Source: Octopus sinensis
Lineage: Eukaryota
Assembly: GCF_006345805.1 (NCBI RefSeq)
Contig: NW_021832167.1
Location: 1 to 31,349, forward strand
Reading direction: 5' to 3'
DNA: 31,349 nt
The position numbers and the translations under genes are program-made. The notes below the pieces were generated by a model. That model saw nothing but the letters and a program-made list of their open reading frames with translations, had not been told where the DNA came from and did no database searches. Position 1 is the stretch's first letter; each line of letters starts with the position of its first letter. Positions 1 to 31,349 of this stretch are shown here, one piece after another.

Positions 1-600
1 AAGGGAACAATACACCAAGGAGTGAAGCTTTGTATTGCCTCTTGCAAGATAGAAATTTGTTTTTTTCTTCTGCGCGTGGTGCGCAGTGTGATCATTGCAA
101 AAAAGCTAAGAAGACAGTAGACCACATGGCTACACGGTGCAACAGAATGCTAAACAGTGACTATGTGAAAAGGCACAATGAGGTTGTGAGATGCATCCAT
201 TTGCACGTATGCAGACAGTTTGGAATAAAGAAAACTGGGAAACTAAAGTCTCATTCAGTACAGTCTAGTTTATCGACTCGAAATGTCGAGATAAGAGTAG
301 ATACACCAATATTGACCGATACACAAGTTCAGTTCAATAAGCCAGATATCTTTATCTATGAGTGGAGCATAGGCATGGAATCCATACGCCTCAAGAGGAA
401 TTCATTACGGCAACCAGTCATTTGGCTGAAGTGGCAAATCAATCTTGCGAGGACCCTTCGGATGAAGCAAACGGGAAAATCTTGTGTTCGGAGAATGAAA
501 GTGCTGATGGTGCCTTGGTGGAAAGCTCTCCCAAGAGGAGAAAAATTCCAGGAGACGAGAATTATTGAGCTAACGTGATTATGAACACATTTTCCAACGA
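1..600 (+). mobile_element. 3' fragment of an R4/Dong-like non-LTR retrotransposon (zinc knuckle + restriction-like endonuclease), internally deleted
   Basis: ORF 30-578 has C-x2-C..TVDH..TRC..DYVKRHNEV and NKPDIFIY (the PD motif of the RLE). The frame then jumps at ~360 to a C-terminal tail (ORF 362-568). The intervening EVGITS..KYDL region, present in the copies at ~18100 and ~28200, is missing. Confidence 0.8.
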
Positions 601-639
601 AACTTAGAATAACTTTTATTGATTTGTATTTTATTTGAT

Positions 640-905
640 GTCTAATCTTGTGGGTCATTTATTAGCCATAAATAATGTGGTAAGAGACTGCGATGAATGC
701 CAGTCTGAAGTCCCGCTGAAACAATATGACGACGTAAGTCATATTTTTGCAGATGTACCGAATGAGAGATTTCAGATTGATCTGATTGACCTAAAAAGAT
801 ATAAAGTTGTGTTATTCCCAAGGTTTGAAAATAATAATTGATCAATTTTCTTGGTTGTTGACTGTGATTGACGTCTATTCGAGATTTTCATTCACCATGA
901 TCTTT
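640..905 (+). mobile_element. Decayed retroviral-like integrase (H2C2 + rve core) fragment; diverged third copy of the element at 13855 and 29772
   Basis: Translates as VVRDCDECQ..NERFQIDLIDLKR then WLLTVIDVYSRF (first D of DDE). The DNA is alignable by eye to 14740-14950. Confidence 0.75.
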
Positions 906-929
906 CTCTCGATAATTTTAAGAACTCTG

Positions 930-1225
930 CCGGATTCTTGTTCAAGTTTAAAAAAAGACATGAATTCCGTCTGAGAAAATTGCATGTGCAGATGAAAACT
1001 GATAAAAAAGTTGACATCGAAAGATTTTTAAATGAATTTCAAAATTTATTCAAGTCCTATACTATCGATGAAATTTATAACCTTGATAAAACAAGGATTT
1101 TCTACAAATTAATTCCACCTAAAAGTATTTGCAAGACTCAGTTTGGACGATATAAAAATTTTAAGGATCAGGTATCTGTAATGTTGTGTGCAAATAATCA
1201 CAAATTAAATCCTGTTTTAGAATAG
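930..1225 (+). mobile_element. pogo/Tigger (CENP-B/DDE_1) transposase fragment
   Basis: GFLFKFKKRH...IYNLDKTRIFYKLIP...KDQVSVMLCAN matches the Tigger pattern WL.RFK.RH...YN.DETGLF...K.R.TV.LCAN. No TIRs found. Confidence 0.8.
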
Positions 1226-2145: not shown

Positions 2146-4043
2146 CTAAAAAAGCAACCGCGCCTTCTCCAGGACGGACTGTATTTTATGGACGCAGGAT
2201 TCATATGAGTTATCCAATTTTTCTTTGAGATGAAATCTGGTCAGGCTTCGTAGGATTTTAACGGCTCTCTTCCTTTGGGTATCGATATGATTTCCATAGG
2301 ATCCTCTGGCATCTATTGTAACCCCAAGGTATTGGAGGTTCTGCGAAAGTTTCAAGTCCCCAACTTCAAAGACACGAGCATTTTCGCTCCTCCGCTTCGA
2401 CAGCCTGCACAGGTGCCAGACGCAGTCAAAAGCCTTCGACAAATCCAAGCACACAGCAGTTGTGCAAGATTTATTACGTATTGCCCAAGAAAGTTCCCTT
2501 TCTAGAACCTTCAAGCAGTTTCCCGTGGATTTCCCAGGACGAAAACCCCATTGTACAACGGAAAGCAGATTATTCTTTTCAACATGTAATGAGAGTCTTT
2601 CAAAAATTATTTTCTCCATAATCTTCGAAAAAGCGCAGATCAGGCTTATAAGCCTGTAGTTTTCTGCTAGGAGACTTGTTTTCCCAGGTTTCTGGATCAT
2701 ACGAACGACTGTGCACTTCCAGGTGGGCGGAAGATAACCAAGGATAAAACTAGCGTCGAAAAGCATAGTTAGAGCCCGTAGGAGGATCCTCGGAGCCTTC
2801 TTAAGAAGTAACACAGGTATGTAGTCGAATCCAAGGGCCTTGTTTTTCAGCCCTGCTATCACTTCTTGTGTCTTTTTTCGGTAATAGTCTTGCATAGAGG
2901 TCCACTCACAAGATTTAGAGATTCTAGCCTTGAAGTGACTTTCTCAAAGGTCTTTTGTGGAATAATTGATTCAGGTTCGACTTCTTGGGTTCTACCCAGC
3001 TGCCTTCTTAGTTCATCCGGGACAAGATCGGAGGGGATATACTTTCCATCTTGCCCCTTTAACACAATGTTGTCGCCTTTCCCTTCCGCGTTGTTCAGGC
3101 GCTGATACGCCTTCCAAAACTTTGGATTTCTCTTATCCTGCATTCAGCATTCCTTCCTCCATGATTTTTCTATTTTCTTTTTCCCAATTTCAAGTATCAT
3201 CGTCTTGAGGTGGTCGATTTCAACTTTTAACTGATTTCTGACTCCCACGTTGGAACACCTCCTCGTGCAATTCTCGAGGTCGTCTATATCTTCCATGGTC
3301 CGAAGAGGACCGAGCACGGTAGTATTAAGTGCCAAGCGCATAGAGTACTCAAATAGATGCCAATCCACATTCGACAGAGTATATCCAATAAACACGTCTT
3401 CTGTCAGATTTATTTTCGTCCTTAGTCTCAATGATTGCGGGATGTGATCACTTCCTACATCCACCTCGATTGTCGGACGATCGCAAAGTGGAGTAATAGA
3501 CGCTCTATCCGGATAGTGGTTTAGCTCTTCGGACGTCCATATCGAAAAACCGAGATTTCGAGACAAACTCTCAAGTACCTCTCCGTCCGTATTGGTTGCT
3601 TCACACCTATAGACAACATTCTTTGCGTTCAGGTCACCGGCTAGGATAGCCAGATTGTTCTCTTCAAAAAATGTCCTAACAACTGCCGGGTAGCTTCTCA
3701 AAGCCTTTGAATACATCCCTCCGACAGTAAACCAGCCAACGGCTGTAAGTAGTTCGAACGATATAAGTTCACAGGACTTGTCTTCAATAATCTTTCCGTT
3801 TTTGACTCTCATACTTCTATTATAGAAGACAGAGGTTCCTGTTCCTGCTACTGCGTCAGTTGTCCATGGGATATTAAGGGATTTGTAGCCTTCAAATTCA
3901 ATTTTATTTGGTCCCTTCAGCTTTGTCTCGTTGACAATCAATACTTCCGTTATCGCTGAGGCTAGCAGAAACCTCAGCTCCGTTACCCGTCTCGTGAGTG
4001 AGCGGGCATTTAGAATTGTCAGAACGAGGAATCCTTCCGACAT
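2146..4043 (-). pseudogene. LINE ORF2 (endonuclease-reverse transcriptase), frameshifted and lacking the QG and YADD RT motifs
   Basis: Split over ORFs 3144-4043, 2859-3143 and 2146-2895. The RT jumps from AFDCVWH almost directly to the YLGV region. Confidence 0.88.
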
Positions 4044-4629
4044 GGGTGGCTGACCTCCCGTGGGAGCGCCACCTTTTTCGGTAAAGGGGGTCTGGCTGCT
4101 TTCCGTTTGCTACCCATTTCAGCCGGCTCTAGAGGCGTCCCATCGTCCTCCAGCCGGGCTTCGGGACTTGGCAGCTAAACTCCAGAATTTGCTACCGCAG
4201 TTTTCTTCACTTCTCTCGTCTTCGGGGCGGCGGGTTTTGTTTCTGGGCATGGGTCCGTTTGGATTCCCGTGTTAATTAAGCAGGTCTGAGTTCCGGATTC
4301 GATCCGTTTCTGACAATTTCGTCAGTTTGAACACTAATATCGTATTTCTTTGGGGGTTTGTGGTCAATTAGATGAGTTCCCTTCTGTGTGCTGATAGCAG
4401 CATTCGTGGCAGATTCTGGATCAAGTAACTTCCCCGACCAAGGGGCCTTCATGCCAGACATTTGTATTTCATTTACACGATTTTCCTTAGTGTGAGTCAT
4501 TTCCAGTTTCTTCTTTATCGATTCCGGATCAAGTAACTTCTTCGACCAAGGGTCCTTCATGCCAGACATTTTTATTGCATTTACACGATTATATATTCTC
4601 ACGTTATTAATAATAATTGAAGTTATCAA
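4019..4629 (-). pseudogene. Putative LINE ORF1 (low-complexity, no zinc knuckle), one frameshift and one stop
   Basis: ORF 4276-4629 continues after a frameshift near 4320 as RIESGTQTCLINTGIQTDPCPETKP.. with an internal TAG near 4175. It ends ..SKRKAARPPLPKKV..DSSF* at 4019-4021, overlapping the ORF2 ATG (4043). Confidence 0.55.
4412..4590. repeat. Two ~71-bp direct repeats with 108-bp (36-codon) period inside putative ORF1
   Basis: gattctggatcaagtaacttccccgaccaagggg..ttacacgatt (4412-4482) versus gattccggatcaagtaacttcttcgaccaagggt..ttacacgatt (4520-4590). Encodes NRVN.I.MSGMK.PWS.KLLDPES twice. Confidence 0.9.
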
Positions 4630-6437: not shown

Positions 6438-7472
6438 CAGTGCTCGTCAAAAAAAATTGCTCAGCCATTTTTTCATGCTTTTATTGACAAATTAATAAAA
6501 AAATTAATCTTACGCTTCATTTTTTATTTTAATTCTTAAGTATATTAATTTATTTATGCGATTTTATTTCAATATAAGGAATTTAAAGCATAAAAATTTA
6601 AATCTCGTGACAAAAAACATTGCTCACTTTTCTTGTTATTGCATATGCCACTTTCTCCCAAAAAACAGTTAACTGAATTTAAAAAAGGGATGATTATTGC
6701 GTACTTTAAAGAGGGTAAATCAATCAGAGAAATCTCAAAAATACTTAATTTGCCGTATTCCACAATTTCATTTAATATTCGAAAATTTTGAGAATTTGGA
6801 ACACTGCATCGGAGACCGGGCTCAGATCGTCTTCCGAAACTAAGTTCCCCACAAATACAATTTTTATGTAATGAAACCGAATCACATCCTACATTGTTGG
6901 CAGTGGATTTGTCCAACAAAACTAAAGAAACTTTCAATATTGATGTTTCCCCTAGGACAATTCTGAGAACTTTGAATAAAAATGGGGTATATTGTCGTGT
7001 AGCAAAAAGAAAGCCATTGCTTTCTCAAAAAATATTATTTCGAGATGGTCTGCGTCACTACGATTTTTATCGATATCTGATAGTACATGGAAATCGGTGA
7101 TATTCTCAGATGAGTCAATGTTCGATGTTTTTAACAACAGAAAACATCAGCTTGTTTACAGAAAAAATAAAACGGAGTTAAAAAATGCACATTTGCTGCC
7201 GACTGTTAAGTTCGGAGTAGGGAGAGTTATGATTTGGGGCTGTATATCGTATAGTGGTGTAGGCAATTTGGTTTTTATCAAAGAAACTATGAACTCTGGA
7301 TATTATATAAATTTACTGTCTAATAATCTGGACCAATCAGCTGAAAAAATGGGCTTATCCTCGTTTATTTTTCAATAAAATACTACTTAAAGATGTTTAC
7401 AAAAAAAATAAATCAGAATAATGCTATATAAAGACATAAACATTGGTGAGCAATTTTTTTTGACGACCACTG
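6438..7472 (+). mobile_element. Tc1-family DNA transposon, non-autonomous deletion derivative
   Basis: TIRs cagtgctcgtcaaaaaaaattgctca (6438) and tgagcaatttttttttgacgaccactg-type (to 7472), one mismatch, flanked by TA. Transposase from ATG 6645: HTH, VAKRKPLLS, WKSVIFSDES, VMIWGC, FIFQ*. It has a stop and a frameshift and lacks the QDN..SPDLNPIE part. Confidence 0.93.
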
Positions 7473-7708: not shown

Positions 7709-8743
7709 CTATTTAAGGTTCATTGTTTTGTACAAGTCTACTGATTTTTGCGGCTTTATCCAATTCACATAAACTAATAAATTAAAATATAACCGATTAC
7801 TTTTTCTAAAATTTCCGATAAATATCACAACAATAACTGCCAATGTCACGTATATATACAAATCTACAAATTCACTTTATTAAACTAACATTTTAATTCT
7901 ATTGTCTTTTCGTTCATAAGATTTTCAGGTTTTCTCTCGACATAACTAACAGTAGAGTATTCTTCAAGATGTCCATATGGTAACACAAAAATAACGTTTA
8001 ATAATAATATTTTTAATTTTGAATTTTTTAATTGCATTGAAACTGAATCTAAAAATTAATTAAAATCTGTAAAACTGTTTTCGACTGTCTCACAAAGTCC
8101 GTAATTTATAATACAGAGAACGGCGGATGTAAAATTATTTGTTTTAGTTTTTAATAAAAAATGAAAAAAATAATTATGATAGTAGAAAGTTTTTACTTCC
8201 GATAAAACATGATCAAAATCTATTTTAAATCTTGTTTAAAATACCAAAAAATATATTATTTTCATTTGTTTTTATCCAATATCTGAACGAAAAATTATCG
8301 TGCTTTAAAAGGAATTTTTCTCCTTTGGCAAGGTTTGTAGAATTATTCATATTCTTATTTTCAAAAGCATTAATTATATCTTTTGAAGATTGTACATATT
8401 GTTGGCGATGAAAAGAAACCGAATCCGATTCTTTAAATAGTTTTATATATTTAGCCTTTGGCAGTTCTAATATTTAAAATAGTCCAAAAATTTTGAACCT
8501 TCATACAAAATTTCATATTTTGTTTCTTCACAAAACATTTTCAAAGTTTTCGAACGATTAGCTTTAAATTCATCGTTAATTTCTACAAAATAATTAGAAA
8601 TGCTTGCCAGTTATATTCAAGCAATTTGGTTCATTGAGGAGCGTTCCATTTGACAGAAATATTAATTCTAAAAATAAAATAACCTCAACTCTACCACCTT
8701 TGCTTATTACAACAGTTAAAATTAATAACAGTGAAACGAACAT
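7709..8743 (-). CDS. Orphan type-I membrane glycoprotein, paralog A (~280-290 aa)
   Basis: Signal-like MFVSLLLILTVVISK, N-glycosylation sequons (NGT, NRS, NNS) and TM YLYIYVTLAVIVVIFIG. Six mini-introns (including GC-AG 8583-8607, 8467-8498 and 8049-8075) give an open frame. The exons align with paralog B (SFRYW..FFDFDHVLSEV..YYH..KTNNF.SA..C). Confidence 0.75.
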
Positions 8744-9709: not shown

Positions 9710-10940
9710 AGTATGAGTGGGTCGTGATGTGGTAGGTGACAAGTCGGGTGTGAAACTGGAAGTAAGTGTGTGTGATGAGTGGTAAGGAAGGATGTTTGAG
9801 ATGGACGTAAATGACGTCATTGCCTTAGTCTCCGTAACTCGGTCATCCCCCAAGCAGTCTTGTACTTCCTCGGTCAGAATTAGTTGTGATGATTTCTCTT
9901 TACAAATTCTCATGAGAGCGAGTATCTGCATGCCAAGACTTCTTTATGCTCTAAGGAGCTGCCCTTGCTATGCACAACGAGACAGCCTTTTATTACTTGA
10001 TCAGACACTGAAAGACATGGCCGAAACTATTTTAAATGTTCGTTTTGATGATCTGGGATGGATTCAGTGTAAACTGCCAACAAAATTGGGTGGAGTTGGC
10101 CTCAGGTCCGCATTGGAAGTAGCAGCACCAGCTTATCTCTCGTCGCTCTTGGAAGTAGCAGCACCAGCATGCAGACTAACTAAGATTCGATTTTATGCAA
10201 CGACATCGTCCAAAAATACAAACAGAGGGTCAATCAGCATCGACTCACATGTCTCTTGTCCGGAGCACGCCATCATAGTGGCGCGTGGCTTGATGCTCTC
10301 CCGTGTCCTGCCCTTGGCAATCTATTGGACAATAATTCTATGAGAATCGGTGTAGCACTTCGTCTGGGACTGGATATTTGCCAAGTTCACGGCTGTCGTT
10401 GCGGAGGCCTTGTTGATGCCAAAGGACTGCACCCTCTATCCTGCGGAAGAAGTGCAGGTCGAACCCCTTGACATGCCGCATTGAATGATTTGATACGACG
10501 TGCCCTAGAGGCAGCAGGATTCCCAGCAAGACTGGAACCTGCGGGTCTTAACCGTAATGATGGGAGAAGGCCAGATGGAGTGACTCTTTTCCCCTACTCT
10601 GGGGAAAACCACTAGTTGGAACTCGACATGCGTGGACACTTTCACTCGAAAGAACATCAACATTTCCTTGCGTTCACCTGGATCGGCCGCTAACTTTGCT
10701 GAAAAAGCAAAAATTGCCAAATATTCCACAATCGGGGATTCGTACCGCTTTGTTCCTGTGGCAGTCGAGACTTCGGGTGTCACAGGAACTGTAACTGAGT
10801 CATTCCTTAAAGAAATCGGACGAAAAATTGCTCATGTAAATAACGATTGGAGGGAACCAACATGGCTTCGACAAAGAATAGGTTTGGCCGTTGTTCGCGG
10901 CAATGCCTATTCGATTATGTCGTCAGCCGCGGAAAACTAG
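9710..10940 (+). mobile_element. CRE-clade non-LTR retrotransposon, 3' half (RT thumb, zinc finger, RLE)
   Basis: LPTKLGGVGLRSA..AAPAYLSS; [17 protein letters not shown]...HPLSC; RH..LND...[13 protein letters not shown]; VDT..AE.AK..KY..FVPVAVETSG..LRQRIGLAVVRGNA. Several frameshifts. Confidence 0.9.
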
Positions 10941-11680: not shown

Positions 11681-12898
11681 TTGTTTTTGAATGATTTTCT
11701 AATGTAACATGATAAATCTGTATAAAAATGTAACGTGATAAATTTTGTATGAAATGTAAGTTTTAATAATGCTTTATAATTTACTATTTTTCTTGAGTTC
11801 TCTTTTTTTAATCTGGACAGTTATAATGTTTTAGAATTATCAATTTTAAATCATCCACATTTTAATACATATAATTATCAATTAATTATTCGAGTTTTTA
11901 TATTAAATATTTTGTAATAAAATTACGTAAATTTTATTTAATATTTTTGTAATCATTTTTACTGAACAGACTAATCATGAACTCCATCTTTGACTTCAAT
12001 GTCAAAGAAAAAAACTTATAAAGATTCAAACTCTACTTGCAGCCATTTATCGAAAATCCTTTTTGACTCCTTAAAAAAGACTAAAATATGAATTCGTAAT
12101 AAGGAAAAAGGAGTAACCATAATCAAAAAATTTTTCAAATATTCATGCAATAAACGACTTACGTTTTTTTAAACGAAAGACTAGTCAATTTAAAAACAAT
12201 ATCATATAGTTAAACAAAAAAGATTAGAAAACAAACAATTAAACTATGTTGGATTTTTGAACCGTTTTACTCAATTTAAGGACAGTTCTATCTGCAAAAT
12301 TAAATAAGGATTAAATGCTAGGTGTCATTATGTTTCGGGTTAGATGTTGTAGAGAATTCCAAAGGTGATTTAATGGTAGATATTGGGGGCATAGCCCGTT
12401 CCATTCTAAAAACGTTTTTTTGAAAAATCTGTTAATTTAGTCCGATATGATTGCTCCTCCGACCCTTAAAGATTCCATCTTATATTTATTAATTATTTTT
12501 TAAATGCAATGTCTTTCATATATTTTATCTTATTTATATGTTTGGAAAAGGATTCGTAACTAAAAAATTTATTGTTTTTTCCTAATGATTTATATTTTTT
12601 ATACGGTACGCTTAAAAATGCATTTGATTGAGACCTTTTCTAAAGCTTGTTTTATTACATCAAAAATCTTAATTCTGTTTCATCAGGAACAGAATAAATA
12701 CTGCCAAAAAATATACAGATTTATTACTGTTTTGGTTAATATCAAAGTAGTAAAAAATTTTCATTAAAAAAATTTAATTAATTTATTTATTTAAGACCAA
12801 AAACATTGTCATAATCAAAATAAACTATTTCAGGTGATCCCAGCCTCTTTTAGAAACCTTCGCATATTTTTCTGTGTTCTAAAGCGCATTGTCTAAGA

Positions 12899-13851
12899 CA
12901 GGGGTGTCAAACTCATTTCGCTTTGAGGGCCGCATTTTGTAACAATTTTGCTTCGAGGGCCGCATTTATAATAATTTCTCATTAAGGGAAGATTAGTTCT
13001 GATATTATTATTAAGAGAAACTAAATTATTGAATTATCGCCCTTCAATTTTGGTGAGAGCTGCTTCCAGAGGATTGACATCTTTTTTAGATACAATTTTT
13101 GATATGTCAGGCTGAGCTATTCGTGTAGTTCCGACTTTTATTAAAAAGAATAAATGTTCATCAGTTAGTCTTGTTCTTTGAGCAGTTTTTGTCATTTTCA
13201 TCTTTAAACAAGTGGACGTCGTCTGGACAAATAATATTCGCTGTTTTTACACGGCATTGGTTAATGAAATCACCATCACAATATGATTTTCCATTTACTG
13301 CAAGCATTCTACTGATTTCATAGCTTGCAGTGACTAATGCAGTACTTCGATAATGATTTTTGTGAAATGAGTTTGTAACGCAGATAAATTTTTTCGCAAT
13401 CCATTTAGCTTTGAAACACACATTGGACCTTCTTGGTTAATAAGCAACTTAATACCTTCGAAATAATTGTATGATAGATGATTAGATTGATAATGCCTCT
13501 TTAGGTTGTGTTCTTTCTGTATAGCGATAAACTTGTTACATATCAAACAATGTATTTTTCCATCAACCATTGTGCAAAAATAGAGAAGTTCCCATTTATC
13601 TTGAAACACTCTCCGTTCATCTTTCAAGAAGCGTTTCTTTTTTATTCAAGAAGAAGCACGTGACATTAACAAACACGATTTAAAAATACAATTAAAAATT
13701 TTAATTAAATGTAAAAAAATAAAAAATAATTTTTTGCATTTTATAGCCATTAAATCAGACCACACTTATGTTTGGCAAAGTACGCTGAGGGCCGCACCTA
13801 TGTCTTTCGAGGGCCACATGCGGCCCGCGGGCCGCATGTTTGACACCCCTG
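12899..13851 (-). mobile_element. hAT (Charlie/SPIN-like, GTF2IRD2-type) transposon, internal deletion derivative
   Basis: Perfect 14-bp TIR caggggtgtcaaac / gtttgacacccctg and 8-bp TSD gtctaaga (12891-12898, 13852-13859). Transposase N-terminus FQDKWE..CLIC..KEHNLKRHY..H and ASYEIS..DGDFI is fused to the C-terminus LTDEHL..PDI..KRCQSS. Confidence 0.95.
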
Positions 13852-13854
13852 GTC

Positions 13855-15479
13855 TAAGAGGTCGAAAATCCCGAACATGGACTTTTTTCTTGAGGTTTCC
13901 AAAAAAATTTAATAAGTACTTATCAAACTAGAAATAAAATAATACAAATTACAAATAGACTTATAGCAAATTAACCATTCAAATGGTGTAAAAAGCTGCA
14001 TCTTCTCGCGATAGCCTACAAAACCATAAATTATAAGCAATTTGCGACCAATATTCCTTTTTCCACCCGCATTCGAGACCTCCCGAGCCTTTGACCTCCA
14101 AACATCAAATTTTTTGAAGGACGTCGCTCTCTATTATTTATCAGAGAAAAATCGATGCATGCTAATCTTCTTGACTGCGACAGAAAATTCGCGAGCTATC
14201 GACTTGGTCAGGATCTAACCGATCTCTGGCAATGCACGCAAATCGAGCTTGTTTTTATTTTCAGAACTTTTCTTCAAAAAATTCTAGTAAGGGGGGGGAC
14301 AATGACAGGTGCCAAAAACTTTAATGATAAATGGTAAATTAATCAATACGTAAGTTTTGGAATAATTTGTAAATTTTTATATAATATCATTGATTTTTAC
14401 TAATAAAAATTATTTGAAATAGAAACAATAAACTATTTAAATAATCACGTTGTTCTGATGCCTAACAAAGTTATCATAAAAAATAATGAAGAGTAAAACA
14501 TATTAAAATTCATCCTCGCTCGACAAGAACTGAATATATTAGCTTCTCGGAAGTATAAACTATAAAAGAAGGTTCTTTCGTAGCTATATCTTCAAGATTC
14601 TTTATCTAATCACACGCTTGTTCAACTCACCGAATATGCGGACATTTGCAGAATAGATCCACGACGCTAATTATTGTGAACACAATGCATTAGAAGAATT
14701 TTGTGGAAAATGATTTTATTAAAAGAGATAATATTCATCAGGTGGTAAAAGACTGGAATATATGCCAGTCTGCAGTTCTAATGAAACAATATTACGACAT
14801 AAGTTATATTTTTACGTTTTAATCGAATGAGAGATTTCAGATTGATATGATTCACATAAAAAGGTATAAAATTGTGTTATTTCCAAGGTTTGTAAATGAC
14901 AATGATAAATTTTATTGGCTGTTAACTGTTATTGACGTCTATTCAAGATATAGTGTCATAAAGGAATCTTAGAACTAAAAATTCTATTAGTGTTGTGAAA
15001 AATTAAACGACATCTGCATGAATAATTGCCTTTGCCAATATTTTGACAACGGGACAGAATTCTAAAATATTCGACTTTCTAATTTATGTGAAAAATTCAA
15101 AATTACTCGAATTCATGGAAGGCCTTAGAATCAAGGAATAGTTGAACGATTTAATCAGACAATCACAAGAAGTTTATGAAAATTTATGGCTTTTGACGAT
15201 AAAAAAAAGTGGATAAAACATATTCGAAAGGCTGTATTTTCTACAGTCAAAGAGCTCATTCATTCACATATAAATTGTATTTTTTAATTTTCTAGGCTTT
15301 AGTACGTTTCAAAAATATCGTGGTATTTTTAGATTCAACATTGTTGTTGAATCAAATGTTGAGAAAAATCCAAAAAGTTCTGATATGGAGGAATTAGAAG
15401 TTGTAGAAAATTCCGACATTCATAATAAATGTTTTTTATTGATATTTATTAGTAAATATGATGAGTATTCATGTAATTT
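13855..15479 (+). mobile_element. ~1.6 kb+ integrase-carrying unit, copy 1 (noncoding leader + decayed H2C2-rve integrase)
   Basis: Near-identical to 29772-31349. Integrase motifs IKRDNIHQVVKD..CQ, RFQID, WLLTVIDVYSR, DNGTEF and QGIVERFNQT (D,D,E) lie at ~14650-15250, with stops and frameshifts. Confidence 0.85.
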
Positions 15480-15659
15480 TGAAATCTTAAAATTGCAGTC
15501 TCTGTATTATAGAAGAATGAATAGAATGATGAGTAAACTATTTTTATTTTTAACAATCATTAACATTGATGGATCGCTCGCAGCGCTCGATCACTATCAG
15601 CGCTTACGGAATATTATGATTTCCATCTCATGAAATAGTTTTTATCTGTTCTTTTTTTC

Positions 15660-16236
15660 TCTCCTGGACAATTCGAATTGACTGAATTTTCTTCTGTCCT
15701 CAAAGTTTGGACTGCATCTGGTCTTGCCATTGCCGAGCTGAATCATTCTCAAAAAAGTTGGGATTCCATCCGGTGTAAAGAAATCGTGAAATGCCTGAAA
15801 ACAAGCGCCGATCAAATTGAAATCGCCTCAATGAACGCAGCCGCGCAACCACACCGGGGACTGGTTAAATGCCGTCCCACTATCCTCAGCCGGTTCACTC
15901 TTGAATGATGAGTCAGTTCGACTTAGAATTCCTCTTTGCCATCCCCATCCATGCAAGTGTGGGCAGTTGATAGACTCTGATGGCCTCCACCTTCTTTCCA
16001 GCCGGTTAAGTGCTAAAGGTACTCCGAGATACTCCAGTTTGAACAACGTCGTCAAACTAGGCCTTGCTGCCGCAGGCTTCCCTTTGGTTCTGGAGCCCAC
16101 TGGTCTTGATCGCGAAGACGGTAAGCGTTCGAACGGAATTACGTTTTTCCTATACAGCGAGGGCAAGTGTTTCGTATGGGATGTAACCTGTGCGGACACT
16201 TTTGGTCCGGAGATGGTTACTCAGTCTGCGTCGTAA
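15660..16236 (+). mobile_element. CRE-clade retrotransposon fragment (zinc finger + start of RLE)
   Basis: LRIPLCHPHPCKCGQLIDSDGLHLL..LNNVVKLGLAAAGFPLVLEPTGLDREDGKRSNGITFF..GKCFVWDVTCADT. Confidence 0.85.
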
Positions 16237-16601
16237 TTTTTGTTTTTTAAATAAAATTACTTAGTGTAGACTAATTATGTTTTATAAAATCTATTTAAGT
16301 GTTTAATTAGGAAAATGAATGTGCTTTTTGTTAATTTAAAATATTACCACGAACAAATTAAAAAATGATAATAGTTCTAAGTTTTCAAGGACATTTGAAC
16401 TAAAAGATTTCATAAACATTACTTTTAAGTTTTTTTGTATTAGTTAATATGCATAAAGGTAAGATTTACATATAATCCTCTGTTGCGATTTAGTCAGCTA
16501 GCGATGCTCGACTGCTTACTCTCAAAGGTCTATCGAGTCAGAGAAGAGGAAGAAGAGGAAAAGGAGTTGTATGATATGTATTTAATAAAGAATGTTAATA
16601 A

Positions 16602-17705
16602 CTAAATAAATTCCTGAACATTATTCCGATCAACTGTTTTAGGAAAACCAACGGATCTTTTTGATCTCAAACAACCTAATATATTAAGATATATTTGATT
16701 ACATTCTACGAAGATGCAGAAGAAAATCACTAACAATATGATTAATCCCACATACATGTACAAAACTAAAATTTCATTAAATTAACTCAACATTTTTTTT
16801 GTTCATTATTAAATTCAATTTTAACTTTATTAATTTCTTTTGGTTTTAACCATGTTATTTTTATAAAATCAGTCTCATTAAGCACTTCGTTTGACTCCTC
16901 GACATAACTATTTATGTAATATATTTCTTGATGTTTATATGGTAGCTCAATAAACACAGTTAATGATATAATTTTTGATTTTAAATTCTCTAACTCGATA
17001 GTTACATAATCTAAAAATAAAATAAAACATCCAACTTTTTTCGGTGTGTCCACATAGATTGTATTCGTCGACACACACAGTGGCGGATCTAAAATTATTT
17101 GTTTTTGTTATTAAATTGAATTTTAAAAAATATCTGTGATAATAAGTGGTTTGGACTTCTGATAAAACGTGATCAAAATCTATTTTCAATATCGTATTAT
17201 ATACCAAAAAATATTGTTTTTATGTGTGTTTCTAGCCAATATCTAAATGAATAATCAACATGGTTTAAATTGTATTCAATGTTTGGCTTTAAGTCTCCAT
17301 GATTACTACGATTTCTCAGCTATTAATTATGGATCAAAAAATTAACTATTTCTATACTTTCTCTTGTTTGTAATGCAGATGTTTGTCTTAAAAAAATAAC
17401 AGAATCCGATTTATTAATTGGTTTTCTAAATTCAGCCTTTGGCAATTCTATATTAGATTATTAAAATCTTAAACCATAAAACCAAACGTGAAATTTTCTA
17501 TGTTTCATCCACAATCCAATACCAATCACATCTTTTGTGTTATATGCCATGTTTACATCTAAAAATAAACTTTTTTAAAATCCTTGCCCCATAATTCAAA
17601 AAATTCTGGAGCATCAATAAGTGTTCCGTTTGACAAAAACATTAATTCTAGCACCTTATCGTTTAAGCGTATTACAGTTGCAAACAATAATAGTAATGCA
17701 AACAT
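16602..17705 (-). CDS. Orphan type-I membrane glycoprotein, paralog B (~305 aa)
   Basis: Signal-like MFALLLLFATVI and TM FLYMYVGLIILLVIFFCIFV. Seven introns of 25-29 nt (including GC-AG 17559-17587, 17448-17474 and 17320-17346) leave a 918-nt open frame joining ORFs 16947-17207 and 16787-17074. Confidence 0.78.
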
Positions 17706-17871
17706 TTCAAAGCGTTCACGATAGCTACATTTTATTATTATTTATGGATTTTAATAACGTTTTCCTTCCTTGTTGCTCTTATAAATGCTAATTTAAGAAT
17801 AATCCATATTTTGGTAACTTTTAGTTAACAGTTTTGAATAATAATTTATTTATTAAAGCTGACAAAATATT

Positions 17872-17975
17872 CCGCACTTTTGGATGAGTTTTTCGTGATG
17901 CCGATAGCGGTGGAGACGTCGGATGCTCTTGGTTTAATGACGGAAAACTTCCTCTGCAAGCTCGGGATCAATTTA
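17872..17975 (+). mobile_element. Short CRE RLE fragment
   Basis: gatgagtttttcgtgatgccgatagcggtggagacgtcggatgctcttgg aligns with 29367-29460 (DEFF.V.PIAVET). Confidence 0.75.
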
Positions 17976-18700
17976 AATTCTGTAGCATGCTTTCCAATGT
18001 TTTTCTGATGACCACACACTGGATGGAAGCTTGTGTGGGTCTTTTGAGACCAAATGAGTTGCAGTGATGTTTATAGAAATTACTCACAGCACAGTTTATT
18101 TTAGTACAAGTGGTACTATAGTTACCTTTCCGTTGTCGATTACTTCCAGCTCAGTGGCAAGCAAATCGTACTTTTAGAGCTTTTCCACCTCAACTTGCTT
18201 TAGGTTTTTTAGGAGGTGATCCCAATCTCAATATAAAAACTCGCACCGAATTGAATAATATTTTATCATTATTTGAATAGACCTGAGCCTCGCATTTTTA
18301 GCCAATTTTTTGAAATGAGTAATTTCCAATGGCAAAACTAATAGCCCAAAAACTTTTTTGTGGCAATTTAAACATTTGAACCTCTAAGAAACGGGTCTTG
18401 CTTCAGGCACATAATTAGATATGTCACAAGATAGTATCCAGCTTTTTCTAATGAATAATCGATAGGAGGTCATACGATTAATGAGACGTCCCAACTGGTC
18501 TTGGTGATTTACCGCATTTGATACCAAAGCTGTATAAGCAGATTTCGTACTGAAAGTATCAAGACGTCTATAAAATCAAGGATTTGATATTTCTTTGCCT
18601 CTCCAGCTTGTTCCCCAGCGTTATGTAACCATTAAGATTTTATGTTAAAAGAGTCAGCATTCTTACTGCAATGCGATAAAGCGAAATTTCTAGCATGATA
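17975..18700 (-). mobile_element. Decayed R4/Dong-like RLE retrotransposon 3' region
   Basis: Minus strand gives YIEIGITS..LKQVEVEKL*KYDLLATEL..IVPLVL..FYKHH..QASIQCVVIRK, with a decayed C-x2-C knuckle upstream. Confidence 0.7.
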
Positions 18701-28099: not shown

Positions 28100-28410
28100 A
28101 TCAATTTTGAGTTGTACAAGTTCTAGAGACAATAAAAAAGTTATCGAACAAAAGAACTTTGAGACAACCCCATCCTATGTCAAGACAATTGGAATAATAT
28201 TACTTTTGCTTTATAGAAAGTCGTATTTGTGAAATTTCTCCACTTCAACTTGTTTTAAACCATCTTGTGAGGTGATAGCCACTTCGATTAGATTTATTTC
28301 TTTTTGTCATACACAAAAATGGCAGGTTTATTGAATTAGACTTTCGTTTCAGTCACAATTGACGTGCCAACTCTAATTTCGACATTTCGAGTCGATATTT
28401 TTGACAAAAC
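28100..28410 (-). mobile_element. R4/Dong-like RLE fragment (third copy)
   Basis: STRNVEIRVGTSIVTETKV*FNKPAIFVYDK..LIEVAITSQDGLKQVEVEKFHKYDFL..IIPIVLT*DGVVSKF. The first part matches ORF 30-578 (STRNVEIRVDTPILTDTQVQFNKPDIFIY). Confidence 0.85.
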
Positions 28411-28436
28411 CAAATTTCTTTTCAATTTACTGCTTC

Positions 28437-28770
28437 GGAATGACAATCTTTCTTTTTCGGGAGGGCAAGTGCCTTGTCTGGGATCCTATGTGCATCGACT
28501 CTTTCTGTCCATCGGCAATCATGTCATCTGCCACTTCCCCGGGTCCGCTGCGGAAAAGGCTGAGACGGCCAAAATTAAAAAATACCAAGAACTTGGACGC
28601 CGTTTTATATTCGTACCAATCGCTTTGGAGACATCGGGCGTCGCAGGGCCTCTAACCTCGGCCTTCATCAGCGACATCGGGAGGAAATTGGCCCACAGGA
28701 CGAAAGAGCCACGCGAGGTTTCGTGGCTATTGCAGCGGATATCCATCGCCATTCTCCGGGGCAACACACG
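28437..28770 (+). mobile_element. CRE RLE fragment
   Basis: GMTIFLFREGKCLVWD.MCIDSF + SAAEKAETAKIKKYQELGRRFIFVPIALETSG..SWLLQRISIAILRGN. Confidence 0.88.
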
Positions 28771-29270
28771 GTACTTTCCGCAGGAGGGTGCGATCTTTAG
28801 CCCCCCAGAATTTCCCCTCTGTACATTCCTAACTTATCGGAGCTTGATCGCCAAAGTTGGTCTGCCAGACTTTTTGAGTTGGATCCTTTCTTTTTCTAGG
28901 CGTGCCTTGCCAACCTTTTTGGAGAATTTTTTGTGATGTTTTGGAGTAGACATAGAATAAGCCTCCAGTATAGAACTGTTGACGTCGGCAATTATTTTAT
29001 CCAGTTTGTTTATCCAGAAAAAGATTCCTGATTTGCGATAATAGTTGATTCCCTCTTGAGTCCGACGTTTGTCGAGCAAACCAAAGGGGGTACTTACGCC
29101 CTTGAATAAACAAACTGAAAAAATGTAAGATCACGACATAGCGAAAATGACATGTGTAATAATAATTCAGTTTTAAAATTGCAAATTATAATTATGCAAT
29201 AATGAGAAAATTTTTATAAAAAGAAAAAGTTCCCAATGAGAATATGCAATTAACCAATTTATGCAATTAA

Positions 29271-29649
29271 CTGATATATTTTAAATGGAATGCATATAAA
29301 TTATGGTTTTAAATGTGCTGCTAAGAAGCCTGAAGATTTAAAGATGTCCAAATATTCTTTCCTTTCGGATGAGTTTTTTGTGGTGCCGATAGCGGTGAAG
29401 ACGTCATGTGCTCTTGGTCCAAAGACGGAAAAATTCCTCCGCAAGCTTGGGGCCAAAATCTCCATTCGCACTTACGATCTTCGGGAGGTGGACTGGCTTT
29501 TTCAGCGGTTTTCGATCGCCGTTATCCGGGGGAACAGTTTGGCGATCCGCCAGGCTGCTGGGCCTTCCTTTGATTAATCTTTTATCACTTTTGCTCGAAC
29601 TAAAAAAATTGAAAAAGAAAATTTCAAGTTTTAAACATAAATTTATGGC
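29271..29649 (+). mobile_element. 5'-truncated CRE insertion with 22-bp TSD
   Basis: AAKKPEDLKMSKY..FFVVPIAVKTS..DWLFQRFSIAVIRGNSLAI. Perfect repeat attaaccaatttatgcaattaa at 29249-29270 and 29650-29671. Confidence 0.88.
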
Positions 29650-29771
29650 ATTAACCAATTTATGCAATTAATCGACATGCAATAAACCAATGTTTACTGT
29701 ACTCCAGATTTGGAAGAAAAATGATTTTTCTCTCAGTTGAGAAGGGAAACGGGCAAATTGATATATAACTA

Positions 29772-31349
29772 TAAGAGGTCGAGAATCCCGAACATGGATT
29801 TGTTTCCTGAGGTTTCCAAAAAAAATTTAATAAGTACTTATCAAACTAGAAATAAAATAATACAAATTACAAATAGACTTATAGCAAATTAACCATTCAA
29901 ATTGTGTAAAAAGCTGCATCTTCTCGCGAAAGCCCACAAAACCATAAAGTATAAGCAATTTGCCGACCAACATCTTTTTTCCCCCGGCATTCAAGACCTC
30001 CTGAGCCTTCGGCCTCCAAACATCAAAATTTTTGAAGGACGTTGCTCTCTATTATTGATCTGAAAAAAATCGATGCATGCTAATCTTCTTGACTGCGACA
30101 GAAAATTCGCGAGCTATCGACTTGGTCAGGATCTAACCGATTCTTGGCAATGCACGCAAATCGAGCTTGTTTTTATTTTCAGAACTTTTCTTTAAAAAAT
30201 TCTAGTAAGGGGGGGGGCAATGACAGGTGCCAAAAACTTTAATGATAAATGGTAAATTAATCAATACGTAAGTTTTGGAATAATTTGTGAATTTTTATAT
30301 AATATCATTGATTTTTACTAATAGAAATTATTTGAAATAGAAACAATAAACTATTTAAATAATCACGTTCTTTGATGCCTAACAAAGTTATTATAAAAAA
30401 TAATGAAGAGTAAAACATATTAAAATTCATCCTCGCTCGATAAGAACTGAATATATTAGCTTCTCGGAAGTATAAACTAAAAAAGAAGGTTCTTTCGTAG
30501 CTATATGCGGACATTTGCAGAATGGATTCACGACGCTAATTATTGTGAACACAATTCATTAGAAGAATTTTGTGGAAAATGATTTTATTAAAAGAGATAA
30601 TATTCATCAGGTGGTAAAAGACTGGAATATATGCCAGTCTGCAGTTCTAATGAAACAATATCACGACATAAGTCATATTTTTTACGTTTTTATCGAATGA
30701 TAGATTTCAGATTGATATGATTCACATAAAAAGGTATAAAATTGTGTTATTTCCAAGGTTTGTAAATGACAATGATAAATTTTGTTGGCTGTTAACTGTT
30801 ATTGACGTCTATTCAAGATATAGTGTCATAAAGGAATCTTAGAACTAAAAATTCTATTAGTGTTGTGAAAAATTAAACGACATCTGCATGACTAATTGCC
30901 TTTGCCAATATTTTGACAACGGGACAGAATTCTAAAATATTCGACTTTCTAATTTATGTGAAAAATTCAAAATTACTCGAATTCATGGAAGGCCTTAGAA
31001 TCAAGGAATAGTTGAACGATTTAATCAGACAATCACAAGAAGTTTATGAAAATTTATGGCTTTTGACGATAAAAAAAAGTGGATAAAACATATTCGAAAG
31101 GCTGTATTTTCTACAGTCAAAGAGCTCATTCATTCACATATAAATTGTATTTTTTAATTTTCTAGGCTTTAGTACGTTTCAAAAATATCGTGGTATTTTT
31201 AGATTCAACATTGTTGTTGAATCTAATGTTGAGAAAAATCCAAAAAGTTCTGATATGGAGGAATTAGAAGTTGTAGAAAATTCCGACATTCATAATAAAT
31301 GTTTTTTATTGATATTTATTAGTAAATATGATGAGTATTCATGTAATTT
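29772..31349 (+). mobile_element. Integrase-carrying unit, copy 2 (runs off the window end)
   Basis: Colinear with 13855-15479, with scattered substitutions and a ~50-bp deletion at ~30508 between atat microhomologies. Upstream flanks differ. Confidence 0.85.

What the first reader, a model, noticed from the sequence alone, without database searches (positions are those of the whole stretch)
13855..15479. Recently duplicated integrase element with termini that do not fit known integrase-type transposons
Two near-identical copies 15.9 kb apart share a sharp left boundary, (TAA)GAGGTCGAAAATCCCGAAC, with unrelated upstream flanks. A ~450-bp noncoding leader precedes an H2C2 + DDE integrase. I see no gag, protease, RT or LTR/PBS. 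Ginger-type elements and LTRs start TG; this unit starts GAG after TAA. It could be an undescribed DDE transposon type, or a composite of a separate element (13855-14300) and an integrase element beginning near taaggggggggacaatg (~14288). The right end is not visible in the window.
Basis: partly seen in the sequence, partly recalled or inferred. Interest (0 to 1): 0.7.

Follow-up and report, generated by a model that had tools for sequence, protein, structure and literature searches.

The report
Duplicated dead Ginger2-like integrase relic
Two copies of a 1.6-kb stretch carry the same decayed integrase gene of a known transposon kind (Ginger2-like), so this is an ordinary duplication of dead transposon DNA, not a new type of mobile element.

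Summary
The repeat is real. 13855-15479 matches 29772-31349 on the same strand, 15,917 bp apart: 94.2% identity with gaps, 96.9% without. The left edge is sharp (TAAGAGGTCG) and the left flanks are unrelated.

What is repeated is not a live element. A ~600-bp non-coding leader is followed by a decayed stand-alone integrase gene with its own start codon at 14458 and an rve core at 14718-15242. Copy 1 has 11 in-frame stops and at least two frame changes. Eight stops and both frame changes are shared with copy 2, so the DNA was copied after the gene had died.

Relatives are 400-470-aa integrase-only proteins (rve + H2C2, no RT, no YPYY or GPY/F), nearest in microsporidia. Intact relatives sit in 2.2-3.3-kb units with terminal inverted repeats, and several have TGT ends and 4-bp target duplications. 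That is Ginger2/TDD-like.

The window copies have no terminal inverted or direct repeat, and the right end lies outside the window. The "odd terminus" is therefore only the edge of a two-copy duplication. Known integrase-type transposons also include TA ends (GingerRoot) and AG ends (Polinton).

Most likely this is a local segmental duplication of a dead relic, or an assembly haplotype duplication. Interest is low.

The parts
13855..15479 (+). Copy 1 of the duplicated unit (the part that has a partner in the window)
   Evidence: Self-BLAST 94.2% to 29772-31349; alignment A2; per-100-nt identity profile.
29772..31349 (+). Copy 2 of the duplicated unit, cut by the end of the window
   Evidence: Relative to copy 1 it has one extra 48-nt deletion and one extra 1-nt insertion in the integrase part.
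13855..14457 (+). Non-coding leader of copy 1 (copy 2: 29772-30374)
   Evidence: No Pfam family in any + frame, no family-profile match, no Rfam family or tRNA. No other direct or inverted copy in the window. 6% mismatches between the copies against 1.3% in the integrase part.
14458..15525 (+). Integrase pseudogene, copy 1: stand-alone H2C2-vestige + DDE (rve) gene, broken by 11 in-frame stops and at least 2 frame changes; 3' end uncertain
   Evidence: The start codon aligns with residue 1 of relatives. The family profile matches 14718-15242 at E=8e-40, profile positions 108-279 of 477. Pfam rve E=6.5e-5. Weak C-terminal similarity runs to 15525. The three DDE positions are occupied.
30375..31349 (+). 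Integrase pseudogene, copy 2 (cut by window end): shares 8 of copy 1's 11 stops and its frame changes, plus one more deletion and one more frameshifting insertion
536..896 (+). Third, older fragment of the same integrase family, truncated on both sides by other transposon remnants
   Evidence: Profile hits at 536-808 (E=2e-13) and 840-896. 82.8% DNA identity to 14742-14949.
12899..13851 (.). 953-bp hAT-like non-autonomous element inserted exactly at the left edge of copy 1 (TIR CAGGGGTGTCAAAC / GTTTGACACCCCTG; BED-finger remnant on the - strand)
   Evidence: Pfam zf-BED E=2.3e-4 for 13337-13645(-).
12891..12898 (.). Left 8-bp target-site duplication GTCTAAGA of the hAT-like element
13852..13859 (.). 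Right 8-bp target-site duplication GTCTAAGA; its last 5 nt are the first 5 nt of the duplicated unit
15835..16233 (+). Remnant of an unrelated repeated coding element ('X'), downstream of the integrase remnant of copy 1; the composition switch from AT-rich to GC-richer DNA is at ~15568
   Evidence: blastp to the fuller X copy at 10184-10468, E=9e-16. Sequence and composition. No Pfam family and no database homologue were found.
29275..29574 (+). Tail of another X-family remnant, 197 bp upstream of copy 2 (part of its unrelated left flank)
   Evidence: blastp to 10584-10937 (E=8e-22) and to 17838-18005 (E=2e-15); DNA match 17853-17966 / 29338-29451 at 82%.

Best explanation
The unit is a relic, not a working element.

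Shown:
- It holds a stand-alone integrase-type transposase gene of the Ginger2/TDD-like kind. Intact relatives of this gene sit between terminal inverted repeats. The ends start with TGT in at least three such loci, and a 4-bp target duplication is visible in two.
- The gene had already lost its reading frame, through many stops and at least two frame changes, before the 1.6-kb-plus stretch containing it was copied.

Inferred:
- The copying was a local, non-transpositional event: a direct (tandem-type) segmental duplication of up to 15.9 kb. Its left breakpoint is at 13855 and its junction is at 29771/29772.
- The 'sharp terminus' is therefore a duplication breakpoint.
- The original right part of the integrase element (C-terminal end, 3' region, right inverted repeat) was lost or displaced in copy 1, where an unrelated repeat remnant begins at about 15568.
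- After the duplication, a hAT-like element landed on the edge of copy 1, and the two copies diverged unevenly, possibly through gene conversion.
For: Identity of the gene:
- The rve core is detected by Pfam and by the family profile at E=8e-40.
- Its start codon is homologous to Met1 of relatives.
- An exhaustive HMMER search with the nearest intact relative finds mainly 230-600-aa integrase-only proteins whose match starts at residue ~1-10.
- All 72 mid-length members hit rve, 34 hit Integrase_H2C2, and none hits RT, RNase H or the GPY/F-type C-terminal domains.
- The YPYY and GPY/F motifs occur in 0 of 72.
- In the NJ tree the window copies fall in a 6-member clade with the Dictyocoela proteins. 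That clade lies inside a 23-member clade with P0007 and P0008. Gypsy-type Pol proteins are the most distant, ranks 131-140 of 140.

Ends of relatives:
- P0007 has two independent insertions (L002, L003). The inverted repeats are 45-48 nt, the ends read TGTGG and TGTCG, and L002 has a 4-bp duplication TTAA.
- P0008's contig ends in a perfect 30-nt inverted repeat.
- Metagenome relatives L053 (43-nt repeat, TGTTC ends, TGGT duplication), L037, L050, L039, L086 and L087 carry inverted repeats spanning 2.4-3.3 kb; L021's span 5.1 kb.
- These features match the published Ginger2 description (PMC2836005).

Copied after death:
- 8 of copy 1's 11 stops, and its frame changes, are shared with copy 2.

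No transposon ends on the window copies:
- The best inverted match between 13855-14577 and the 3.3 kb downstream of the integrase core is reached by 75 of 200 shuffles.
- The leader has no other direct or inverted copy in 31 kb.
- The terminal 19-mer never occurs on the - strand.

Geometry fits a tandem-type duplication: same strand, 15.9 kb apart, left flanks unrelated, and copy 2 still matching at 100% where the window ends.
Against: - The right end of copy 2 is outside the window, so the length of the duplicated block is unknown and transposition of a discrete unit cannot be excluded.
- A third fragment of the same family (536-896) shows that the family was multi-copy in this genome.
- The divergence is patchy, 11.5% to 0.5% (chi-square p=3e-13). 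A single simple duplication does not predict this, and CpG decay does not explain it.
- The hAT-like insertion sits exactly on the edge of copy 1. This is an unexplained coincidence.
- The link to Ginger2 rests on shared features of relatives. No reference Ginger2 sequence could be fetched for a direct phylogeny.
- Full ends (a TGT terminus plus a target duplication) were read in only one member of the close 23-member clade (P0007); a second (P0008) shows the inverted repeat but not its ends.
Confidence: 0.5

Rival explanations
1. The unit is a discrete non-autonomous mobile element, or one end of a larger repeat family. Its true left terminus is at 13855-13858, and it was moved in trans after its own integrase had died.
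For: - Both copies begin at exactly the same base, with unrelated flanks.
- The family is multi-copy in the window.
- The 603-nt distance from the edge to the start codon lies within the range seen in relatives, roughly 185-760 nt.
- A TA start would fit GingerRoot-type ends and an AG start would fit Polinton-type ends.
Against: - Only two copies are visible, and both could descend from one truncated copy.
- No inverted or direct terminal repeat was found.
- There is no TGT end like those of the relatives.
- No candidate target duplication of the left flank was found downstream.
- Close spacing on the same strand favours local duplication.
Confidence: 0.22
2. Assembly artefact: the two copies are the two haplotypes of one locus, placed one after the other in the contig (a false tandem duplication).
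For: - The geometry is the same as for a real tandem duplication.
- The differences look like alleles of a highly heterozygous invertebrate: patchy 0-11% divergence, a 48-nt indel, and presence or absence of a 953-bp transposon.
Against: - There is no run of N or other gap mark in the window.
- The 14 kb between the copies would have to be part of the mis-joined block.
- Nothing in the window tests this idea directly.
Confidence: 0.15
3. Chimeric retro-copy: a transcript of the dead integrase element, starting at its transcription start (= the sharp left edge), was joined to a 5'-truncated retroelement ('X', from ~15568) by template switching, and the product was copied again through X's 3' end.
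For: - In copy 1 the integrase remnant runs directly into the X-family remnant on the same strand.
- A sharp 5' edge with no terminal repeat is what a transcript start would give.
Against: - X could not be classified at all: no Pfam family and no database homologue.
- No flanking target duplication was found.
- An intron-like stretch is retained in the leader. This is my own reading of the sequence and was not tested.
- Whether copy 2 also continues into X cannot be seen.
Confidence: 0.05
4. A truly new type of integrase (DDE) transposon with GAG or TAA-GAG termini.
For: The edge does not start with TG, and the unit holds no RT, gag or LTR.
Against: - The integrase is an ordinary member of a clade whose intact members have TGT-ended inverted repeats.
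- No second end is visible.
- Both copies are dead and share their lesions.
- Two copies cannot define a terminus.
Confidence: 0.03
5. The unit is part of a larger known element: the internal part or LTR of an LTR retrotransposon, or the end of a Maverick/Polinton.
For: - The two copies are direct and 15.9 kb apart, as LTRs of a giant element would be.
- Polintons carry an rve integrase near an end that starts with AG.
Against: - The integrase has its own start codon and no RT or RNase H upstream.
- It is most distant from Pol-type integrases.
- No Pfam family was found in any of the 16 longest open segments between the copies, so no polymerase, capsid, ATPase, RT or gag.
- A Polinton would need an inverted repeat, not a direct one, and none is present within 17.5 kb.
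- Relatives carry H2C2, which Polinton integrases are reported to lack (PMC2836005).
Confidence: 0.03

Closest known systems
Ginger2/TDD DNA transposons (Bao, Kapitonov & Jurka 2010, PMC2836005)
   Same: - A single stand-alone integrase-type transposase with an H2C2 finger and a DDE (rve) core, and without the YPYY and GPY/F motifs.
- Relatives of the window's gene lie in 2.2-3.3-kb units with 30-166-nt terminal inverted repeats. Several have TGT(NR) ends, two have a visible 4-bp target duplication, and L002 sits in an AT-rich target.
   Different: - The window copies are dead.
- They show no inverted repeat and no TGT end, and no target duplication can be read.
- Grouping with reference Ginger2 transposases could not be tested because no reference sequence could be fetched.
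- The nearest relatives are microsporidian proteins annotated as 'Gag-Pol polyprotein'.
GingerRoot DNA transposons (PMC6839031)
   Same: An integrase-related DDE transposase in a TIR element. Most ends are TA..TA, which the first two shared bases of the unit (TA) would fit.
   Different: GingerRoot has 100-150-bp inverted repeats, a 6-bp target duplication and elements of 3.9-12.9 kb. None of these features is visible here. The protein relationship was not tested.
Ginger1 DNA transposons and the host genes derived from them (vertebrate host genes reported in PMC2836005)
   Same: A Gypsy-integrase-like transposase outside an LTR element.
   Different: Ginger1 proteins carry YPYY and GPY/F motifs and often OTU or Ulp1 protease domains, and they target CCGG or CCGT. 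None of 72 relatives has these motifs or domains. A domesticated host gene would not carry 11 stops.
Ty3/Gypsy LTR-retrotransposon integrase
   Same: The same domain pair (Integrase_H2C2 + rve) and the same DDE chemistry.
   Different: Here the gene starts at its own Met, with no RT or RNase H upstream and no LTR. Gypsy-type Pol proteins are the most distant sequences in the tree.
Maverick/Polinton
   Same: An rve integrase close to an element end, with ends reported as AG..TC.
   Different: A Polinton needs long inverted repeats and polymerase B, capsid, ATPase and protease genes. None was found.

Membership tests
Ginger2/TDD | Single stand-alone integrase-type transposase (H2C2 + DDE/rve), not part of a gag-pol polyprotein | tested here: met
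   Own start codon homologous to Met1 of relatives. rve core. No RT or gag in the unit. Relatives are integrase-only. H2C2 is only vestigial in the window copies.
Ginger2/TDD | Transposase lacks the YPYY and GPY/F motifs | tested here: met
   0 of 72 stand-alone relatives have either motif or a GPY/F-type Pfam domain. In the window copies the C-terminal part is too decayed to judge.
Ginger2/TDD | Terminal inverted repeats of about 45-300 bp | tested here: not met
   Window: no inverted match above shuffles, no inverted copy of the leader or of the terminal 19-mer. Relatives: met in L002/L003, L089, L053, L037, L050, L086, L087. The right end of the window unit may simply be missing.
Ginger2/TDD | Element ends 5'-TGTNR ... 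YNACA-3' | tested here: not met
   The shared sequence starts TAAGAGGTCG. Relatives start TGTGG / TGTCG (L002/L003) and TGTTC (L053, L037).
Ginger2/TDD | 4-bp target-site duplication (5 bp in TDD-4/5), AT-rich target | not testable with these tools
   The right end of both copies is not identifiable in the window. No repeat of the left flank was found downstream. Relatives: TTAA (L002) and TGGT (L053).
Ginger2/TDD | Transposase groups with reference Ginger2/TDD transposases in a phylogeny | not testable with these tools
   No reference Ginger2 sequence can be fetched by name or accession. Source annotations of relatives are uninformative: 'Gag-Pol polyprotein', 'transposase InsO family protein', 'hypothetical protein'.
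Ginger1 | YPYY and GPY/F motifs; OTU or Ulp1 protease domain; CCGG/CCGT target duplication | tested here: not met
   Motifs in 0 of 72 relatives, no protease domain among their Pfam hits.
GingerRoot | 100-150-bp inverted repeats, TA..TA ends, 6-bp target duplication | tested here: inconclusive
   The unit's first two shared bases are TA, but there is no inverted repeat and no readable right end. Features are taken from PMC6839031.
LTR retrotransposon (Ty3/Gypsy), internal part | Integrase is the C-terminal part of a Pol with RT/RNase H upstream; LTRs flank the element | tested here: not met
   No RT or RNase H in any + frame of 13600-17600. The flanks upstream of the two copies are unrelated. 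Own Met. No direct repeat of the leader apart from copy 2. Most distant from Pol-type integrases.
Maverick/Polinton | Long inverted terminal repeats (AG..TC), 6-bp duplication, polymerase B, capsid, ATPase and protease genes | tested here: not met
   No inverted copy within 17.5 kb. No Pfam family in the 16 longest open segments between the copies. The full six-frame translation of that interval was not scanned.

The most novel reading that the evidence does not exclude
The 13855 edge is a genuine element terminus. On this reading the unit is a non-autonomous derivative of a Ginger2-like transposon that has acquired non-TG ends. Alternatively it is a transcript-derived chimera whose 5' edge marks a promoter start and which is still copied by another element's machinery. 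Either would be a new variant of integrase-type mobile DNA.
Probability: 0.07. Interest if true: 0.5.

Novelty: new member of a known kind. Interest (0 to 1): 0.15.

Why it matters
It matters little for mobile-element biology. The case shows how a two-copy duplication of a dead transposon relic can mimic a 'new terminus'.

Two minor points may be useful:
1. A sizeable, mostly unannotated clade of stand-alone integrase genes with Ginger2-type ends exists in public data. Its named members are in microsporidia, where they are labelled 'Gag-Pol polyprotein' although they carry no gag, RT or protease.
2. The window is a dense transposon graveyard in which local duplication, nested insertion and uneven divergence can be read directly.

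Tried and rejected
1. Finding the source contig in order to read past the window end. Exact look-ups of two window ORFs found nothing.
2. Host identification. The intact endonuclease ORF has only one hit, 59% identical, in Octopus sinensis, so the host remains unknown.
3. A weak tblastn similarity of 14013-14111 (in the leader) to integrase residues ~210-238 of several relatives. The family profile did not support it, so it was dropped.
4. A candidate inverted repeat, 14383-14415 / 15535-15567 (33 nt, 76%). Its right arm abuts the composition switch and reads TGTTA in reverse complement. It is reached by 16 of 200 shuffles and has no target duplication, so it is treated as chance.
5. A search for a target duplication of the pre-insertion left flank downstream of copy 1 found nothing meaningful.
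6. CpG decay as the cause of the patchy divergence. CpG observed/expected is ~1 and only 7 of 36 leader mismatches are in a CpG context. Rejected.
7. Rfam and tRNA scans of the window found nothing.
8. The left-end 24-mer has no match in the viral contig collection.
9. Naming the 'X' repeat downstream of the integrase failed: no Pfam family and no database homologue.
10. The Polinton and giant-LTR readings. There are no protein families in the open segments between the copies.
The nearest intact relative was used instead.
Full report
**1. The observation.**
A self-comparison of the window gives one long alignment, 13855-15479 against 29772-31349. Both copies are on the + strand and their starts lie 15,917 bp apart. 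Identity is 94.2% over 1628 columns, and copy 2 ends only because the window ends.

Without gap columns the identity is 96.9%, with 49 mismatches. The copies also differ by four indel events, two in the leader and two in the integrase part.

The alignment with 100 nt of extra flank shows that the shared sequence begins at T13855 / T29772 (TAAGAGGTCG). The upstream sequences do not align. The 19-mer GAGGTCGARAATCCCGAAC occurs exactly twice, even with three mismatches allowed, and never on the minus strand. None is expected by chance.

**2. The left flank of copy 1 is a later insertion, but this does not move the edge.**
Directly upstream of copy 1 lies a 953-bp element, 12899-13851.
- It has terminal inverted repeats CAGGGGTGTCAAAC / GTTTGACACCCCTG.
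- It has a perfect 8-bp target duplication, GTCTAAGA, at 12891-12898 and 13852-13859.
- It carries a BED-finger remnant on the minus strand (Pfam zf-BED E=2.3e-4).
- It is therefore a hAT-like non-autonomous element.

The last five bases of its target duplication are the first five bases of the duplicated unit. If the two flanks are read as the empty site, the sequence upstream of the unit in copy 1 (...GCGCATTGTC) is still unrelated to that of copy 2 (...ATATATAACTA). The edge is real, and the insertion on top of it is an unexplained coincidence.

**3. What the unit contains.**
- *Core:* in one + frame, Pfam finds an rve integrase core at E=6.5e-5, below the gathering score because of decay. 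A profile built from 72 relatives matches 14718-15242 (E=8e-40, profile positions 108-279 of 477) and 30693-31112 in copy 2.
- *Start:* residues 1-35 of a relative align to 14458-14562, beginning at an ATG. The gene therefore starts at 14458, like its stand-alone relatives, and the non-coding leader is 603 bp (13855-14457), not ~450.
- *End:* weak similarity to the C-terminal half of relatives continues to about 15525. At about 15568 the AT-rich sequence gives way to GC-richer DNA. That DNA belongs to an unrelated repeated coding remnant, called 'X' here (15835-16233).
- *Catalytic and zinc positions:* the three DDE positions are occupied, and three of the four zinc-ligand positions survive in the alignment. 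Pfam does not detect an H2C2 finger in the window copies.
- *Third fragment:* an older fragment of the same family lies at 536-896. It is 82.8% identical at DNA level and truncated on both sides by other transposon remnants.

**4. The gene is dead, and it was dead before it was copied.**
Over its frame pieces, copy 1 has 11 in-frame stop codons and at least two frame changes. Eight of the stops are present at the homologous triplet of copy 2.

The copies differ by only two indel events inside the gene: one 48-nt deletion and one 1-nt insertion, both in copy 2. Copy 1's frame changes are therefore shared as well. Whatever copied this DNA copied a pseudogene. The element did not copy itself with its own enzyme.

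**5. What family the integrase belongs to.**
- *Nearest relative:* the word-indexed protein search found a single relative, a 261-aa protein of the microsporidian Dictyocoela muelleri. It is annotated 'Gag-Pol polyprotein', is 40% identical, and has rve + H2C2 only.
- *The wider family:* an exhaustive HMMER search with that protein found 84 representatives at E<=1e-30. Most listed hits are 230-600-aa proteins whose match begins at residue ~1-10, that is, integrase-only proteins.
- *Domains:* of 72 mid-length members, 72 hit rve, 34 hit Integrase_H2C2 and one hits a chromodomain. None hits RT, RNase H, protease or the GPY/F-type C-terminal domains. None contains a YPYY or GPY/F motif.
- *Outgroup:* four of the six longer hits that were scanned are true Gypsy-type Pol proteins with RT and RNase H, and they serve as an outgroup.
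- *Tree:* in a neighbour-joining tree of the core, the two window copies sit in a 6-member clade with the Dictyocoela proteins. That clade lies inside a 23-member clade containing P0007 and P0008. The Pol-type proteins are the most distant of 140 sequences.

**6. What intact relatives look like.**
- *P0007* was found on two contigs from different samples, with different flanks. In both, the sequence becomes common exactly at TGTGGCGCGCG. In L002 a 45-48-nt inverted repeat closes the unit 2.2 kb downstream, with the end TGTCG, and both flanks read TTAA.
- *P0008's* contig begins and ends with a perfect 30-nt inverted repeat.
- *A scan of metagenome contigs* with an alignment of the 14 closest relatives returned 80 loci.
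  - L037, L039, L050, L053, L086 and L087 have 43-166-nt inverted repeats bracketing the integrase gene, with spans of 2.4-3.3 kb. L021's 128-nt repeats span 5.1 kb.
  - L053 has TGTTC ends and a 4-bp duplication, TGGT. L037 also starts with TGTTC after TA.
- *Comparison with the published description:* these features match Ginger2/TDD. That family has one H2C2 + DDE transposase without YPYY or GPY/F, inverted repeats of 45-297 bp, TGTNR ends, 4-bp duplications in animals and elements from 2.7 kb upward (PMC2836005).
- *Limits:* I could not fetch a reference Ginger2 sequence, so this is a feature-based assignment, not a tested phylogenetic one.

**7. The window copies do not show such ends.**
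- The best inverted match between 13855-14577 and the 1 kb or 3.3 kb downstream of the integrase core is reached by 16 and by 75 of 200 dinucleotide shuffles.
- The leader has no other direct or inverted copy anywhere in the 31 kb.
- The terminal 19-mer has no minus-strand match.
- No repeat of the left flank that could serve as a target duplication was found downstream.
- None of the 16 longest open segments between the copies (16.8-29.1 kb) hits any Pfam family. This argues against a Polinton or a giant LTR element whose ends the two copies would be.

**8. How the pair most likely arose.**
The pattern is two direct copies 15.9 kb apart, with unrelated left flanks. Copy 2 is still 100% identical over the last 125 nt, where the window ends. 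A tandem-type segmental duplication gives exactly this: the left edge is the breakpoint and 29771/29772 is the junction. The same picture would arise if an assembler placed two haplotypes in tandem.

A trans-mobilised non-autonomous unit cannot be excluded, because both copies start at the same base and the family was multi-copy here. It lacks positive support, however: no second end, no terminal repeat and no target duplication. A transcript-derived chimera with the X remnant is a further, weakly supported possibility.

I put about 0.5 on a real local duplication, 0.15 on an assembly duplication, 0.22 on a mobile non-autonomous unit, and a few per cent each on the remainder.

**9. Unexplained.**
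Divergence between the copies is strongly uneven:

| Region | Mismatches / aligned positions |
|---|---|
| 13855-13954 | 4/100 |
| 13955-14154 | 23/200 |
| 14155-14854 | 19/651 |
| 14855-15479 | 3/625 |

The heterogeneity is significant (chi-square p=3e-13). CpG observed/expected is about 1 across the window, and only 7 of 36 leader mismatches are in a CpG context. Methylation-driven decay is therefore not the cause. Gene conversion, allelic mosaicism or a composite origin of leader and gene remain open. The hAT-like insertion exactly on the edge of copy 1 is also unexplained.

**10.
The argument 'known integrase-type transposons start with TG, this one does not' is weaker than stated.
- GingerRoot elements mostly end TA..TA and Polintons end AG..TC (PMC6839031).
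- With only two copies, the first base of the unit cannot be fixed within TAAGAGG.
- More importantly, an edge shared by two copies of dead DNA is not evidence of a terminus.

**11. Verdict.**
This is an ordinary finding: a decayed member of a known kind of transposon (Ginger2/TDD-like stand-alone integrase), duplicated after its decay in a region dense with transposon remnants. It is a new member of a known kind, of low interest.

Noticed in passing
window 12899-13851 (target duplications 12891-12898 and 13852-13859): A 953-bp hAT-like non-autonomous element with 14-nt terminal inverted repeats, a perfect 8-bp target duplication GTCTAAGA and a BED-finger remnant on the minus strand. It sits exactly on the left edge of copy 1 and is absent from copy 2.
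   Followed up: yes
window 13855-15479 vs 29772-31349: Divergence between the two copies is patchy: 11.5% in 13955-14154, ~3% in 14155-14854 and 0.5% in 14855-15479 (p=3e-13). CpG decay does not explain it.
   Followed up: partly
window 2149-4109 (-): A non-LTR retrotransposon with largely open endonuclease and reverse-transcriptase reading frames (299-aa and 249-aa ORFs; Pfam RVT_1 E=6e-13, Exo_endo_phos_2 E=1e-3). The only database hit of the endonuclease ORF is an Octopus sinensis protein at 59% identity.
   Followed up: partly
window 10184-10937, 15835-16233, 17838-18005, 28340-28933, 29275-29574 (all +): Five remnants of one unclassified coding repeat family ('X'). They are related to one another at 40-64% protein identity but have no Pfam family and no database homologue. 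By my reading it looks like the zinc-knuckle plus nuclease-like tail of a retroelement, but this was not tested.
   Followed up: partly
window 3-575 (+) and 872-1222 (+): The third integrase fragment (536-896) is boxed in on both sides. On the left is a 191-aa open segment that looks like the C-terminal tail of another retroelement (no Pfam hit). On the right is a pogo/Tigger-like remnant (Pfam HTH_Tnp_Tc5 E=1.3e-4).
   Followed up: partly
window 6792-7375 (+): A Tc1/mariner-type transposase remnant (Pfam HTH_Tnp_Tc3_2 E=7e-9 for 6792-7097).
   Followed up: no
window 7936-8670 and 16898-17650: An AT-rich repeat pair of about 750 bp at 67% identity, of unknown nature. One copy lies between the two X pieces downstream of integrase copy 1.
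   Followed up: no
window 4412-4482 and 4520-4590: A 71-nt direct repeat (92%) at 108-nt spacing, lying inside a 117-aa minus-strand ORF.
   Followed up: no
P0001, P0002 (Dictyocoela), P0042/P0154/P0155 (Enteropsectra breve); loci L001, L008: The few named relatives of this integrase are microsporidian. The two Dictyocoela proteins are labelled 'Gag-Pol polyprotein', although they carry only rve and H2C2 domains. This is probably a mis-annotation of Ginger2-like transposases. The link between a parasite and an animal host might reflect horizontal transfer.
   Followed up: partly
locus L006 68-1324: In a metagenome contig, a complete Tc1/mariner element (perfect 26-nt inverted repeats, 344-aa DDE_3 transposase) lies immediately upstream of an intact stand-alone integrase gene (P0017). 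This looks like a nested insertion into the integrase element's 5' region.
   Followed up: no
window, whole: CpG observed/expected is about 1.0 at 32.7% G+C, so this host genome shows no sign of CpG depletion in this region.
   Followed up: no
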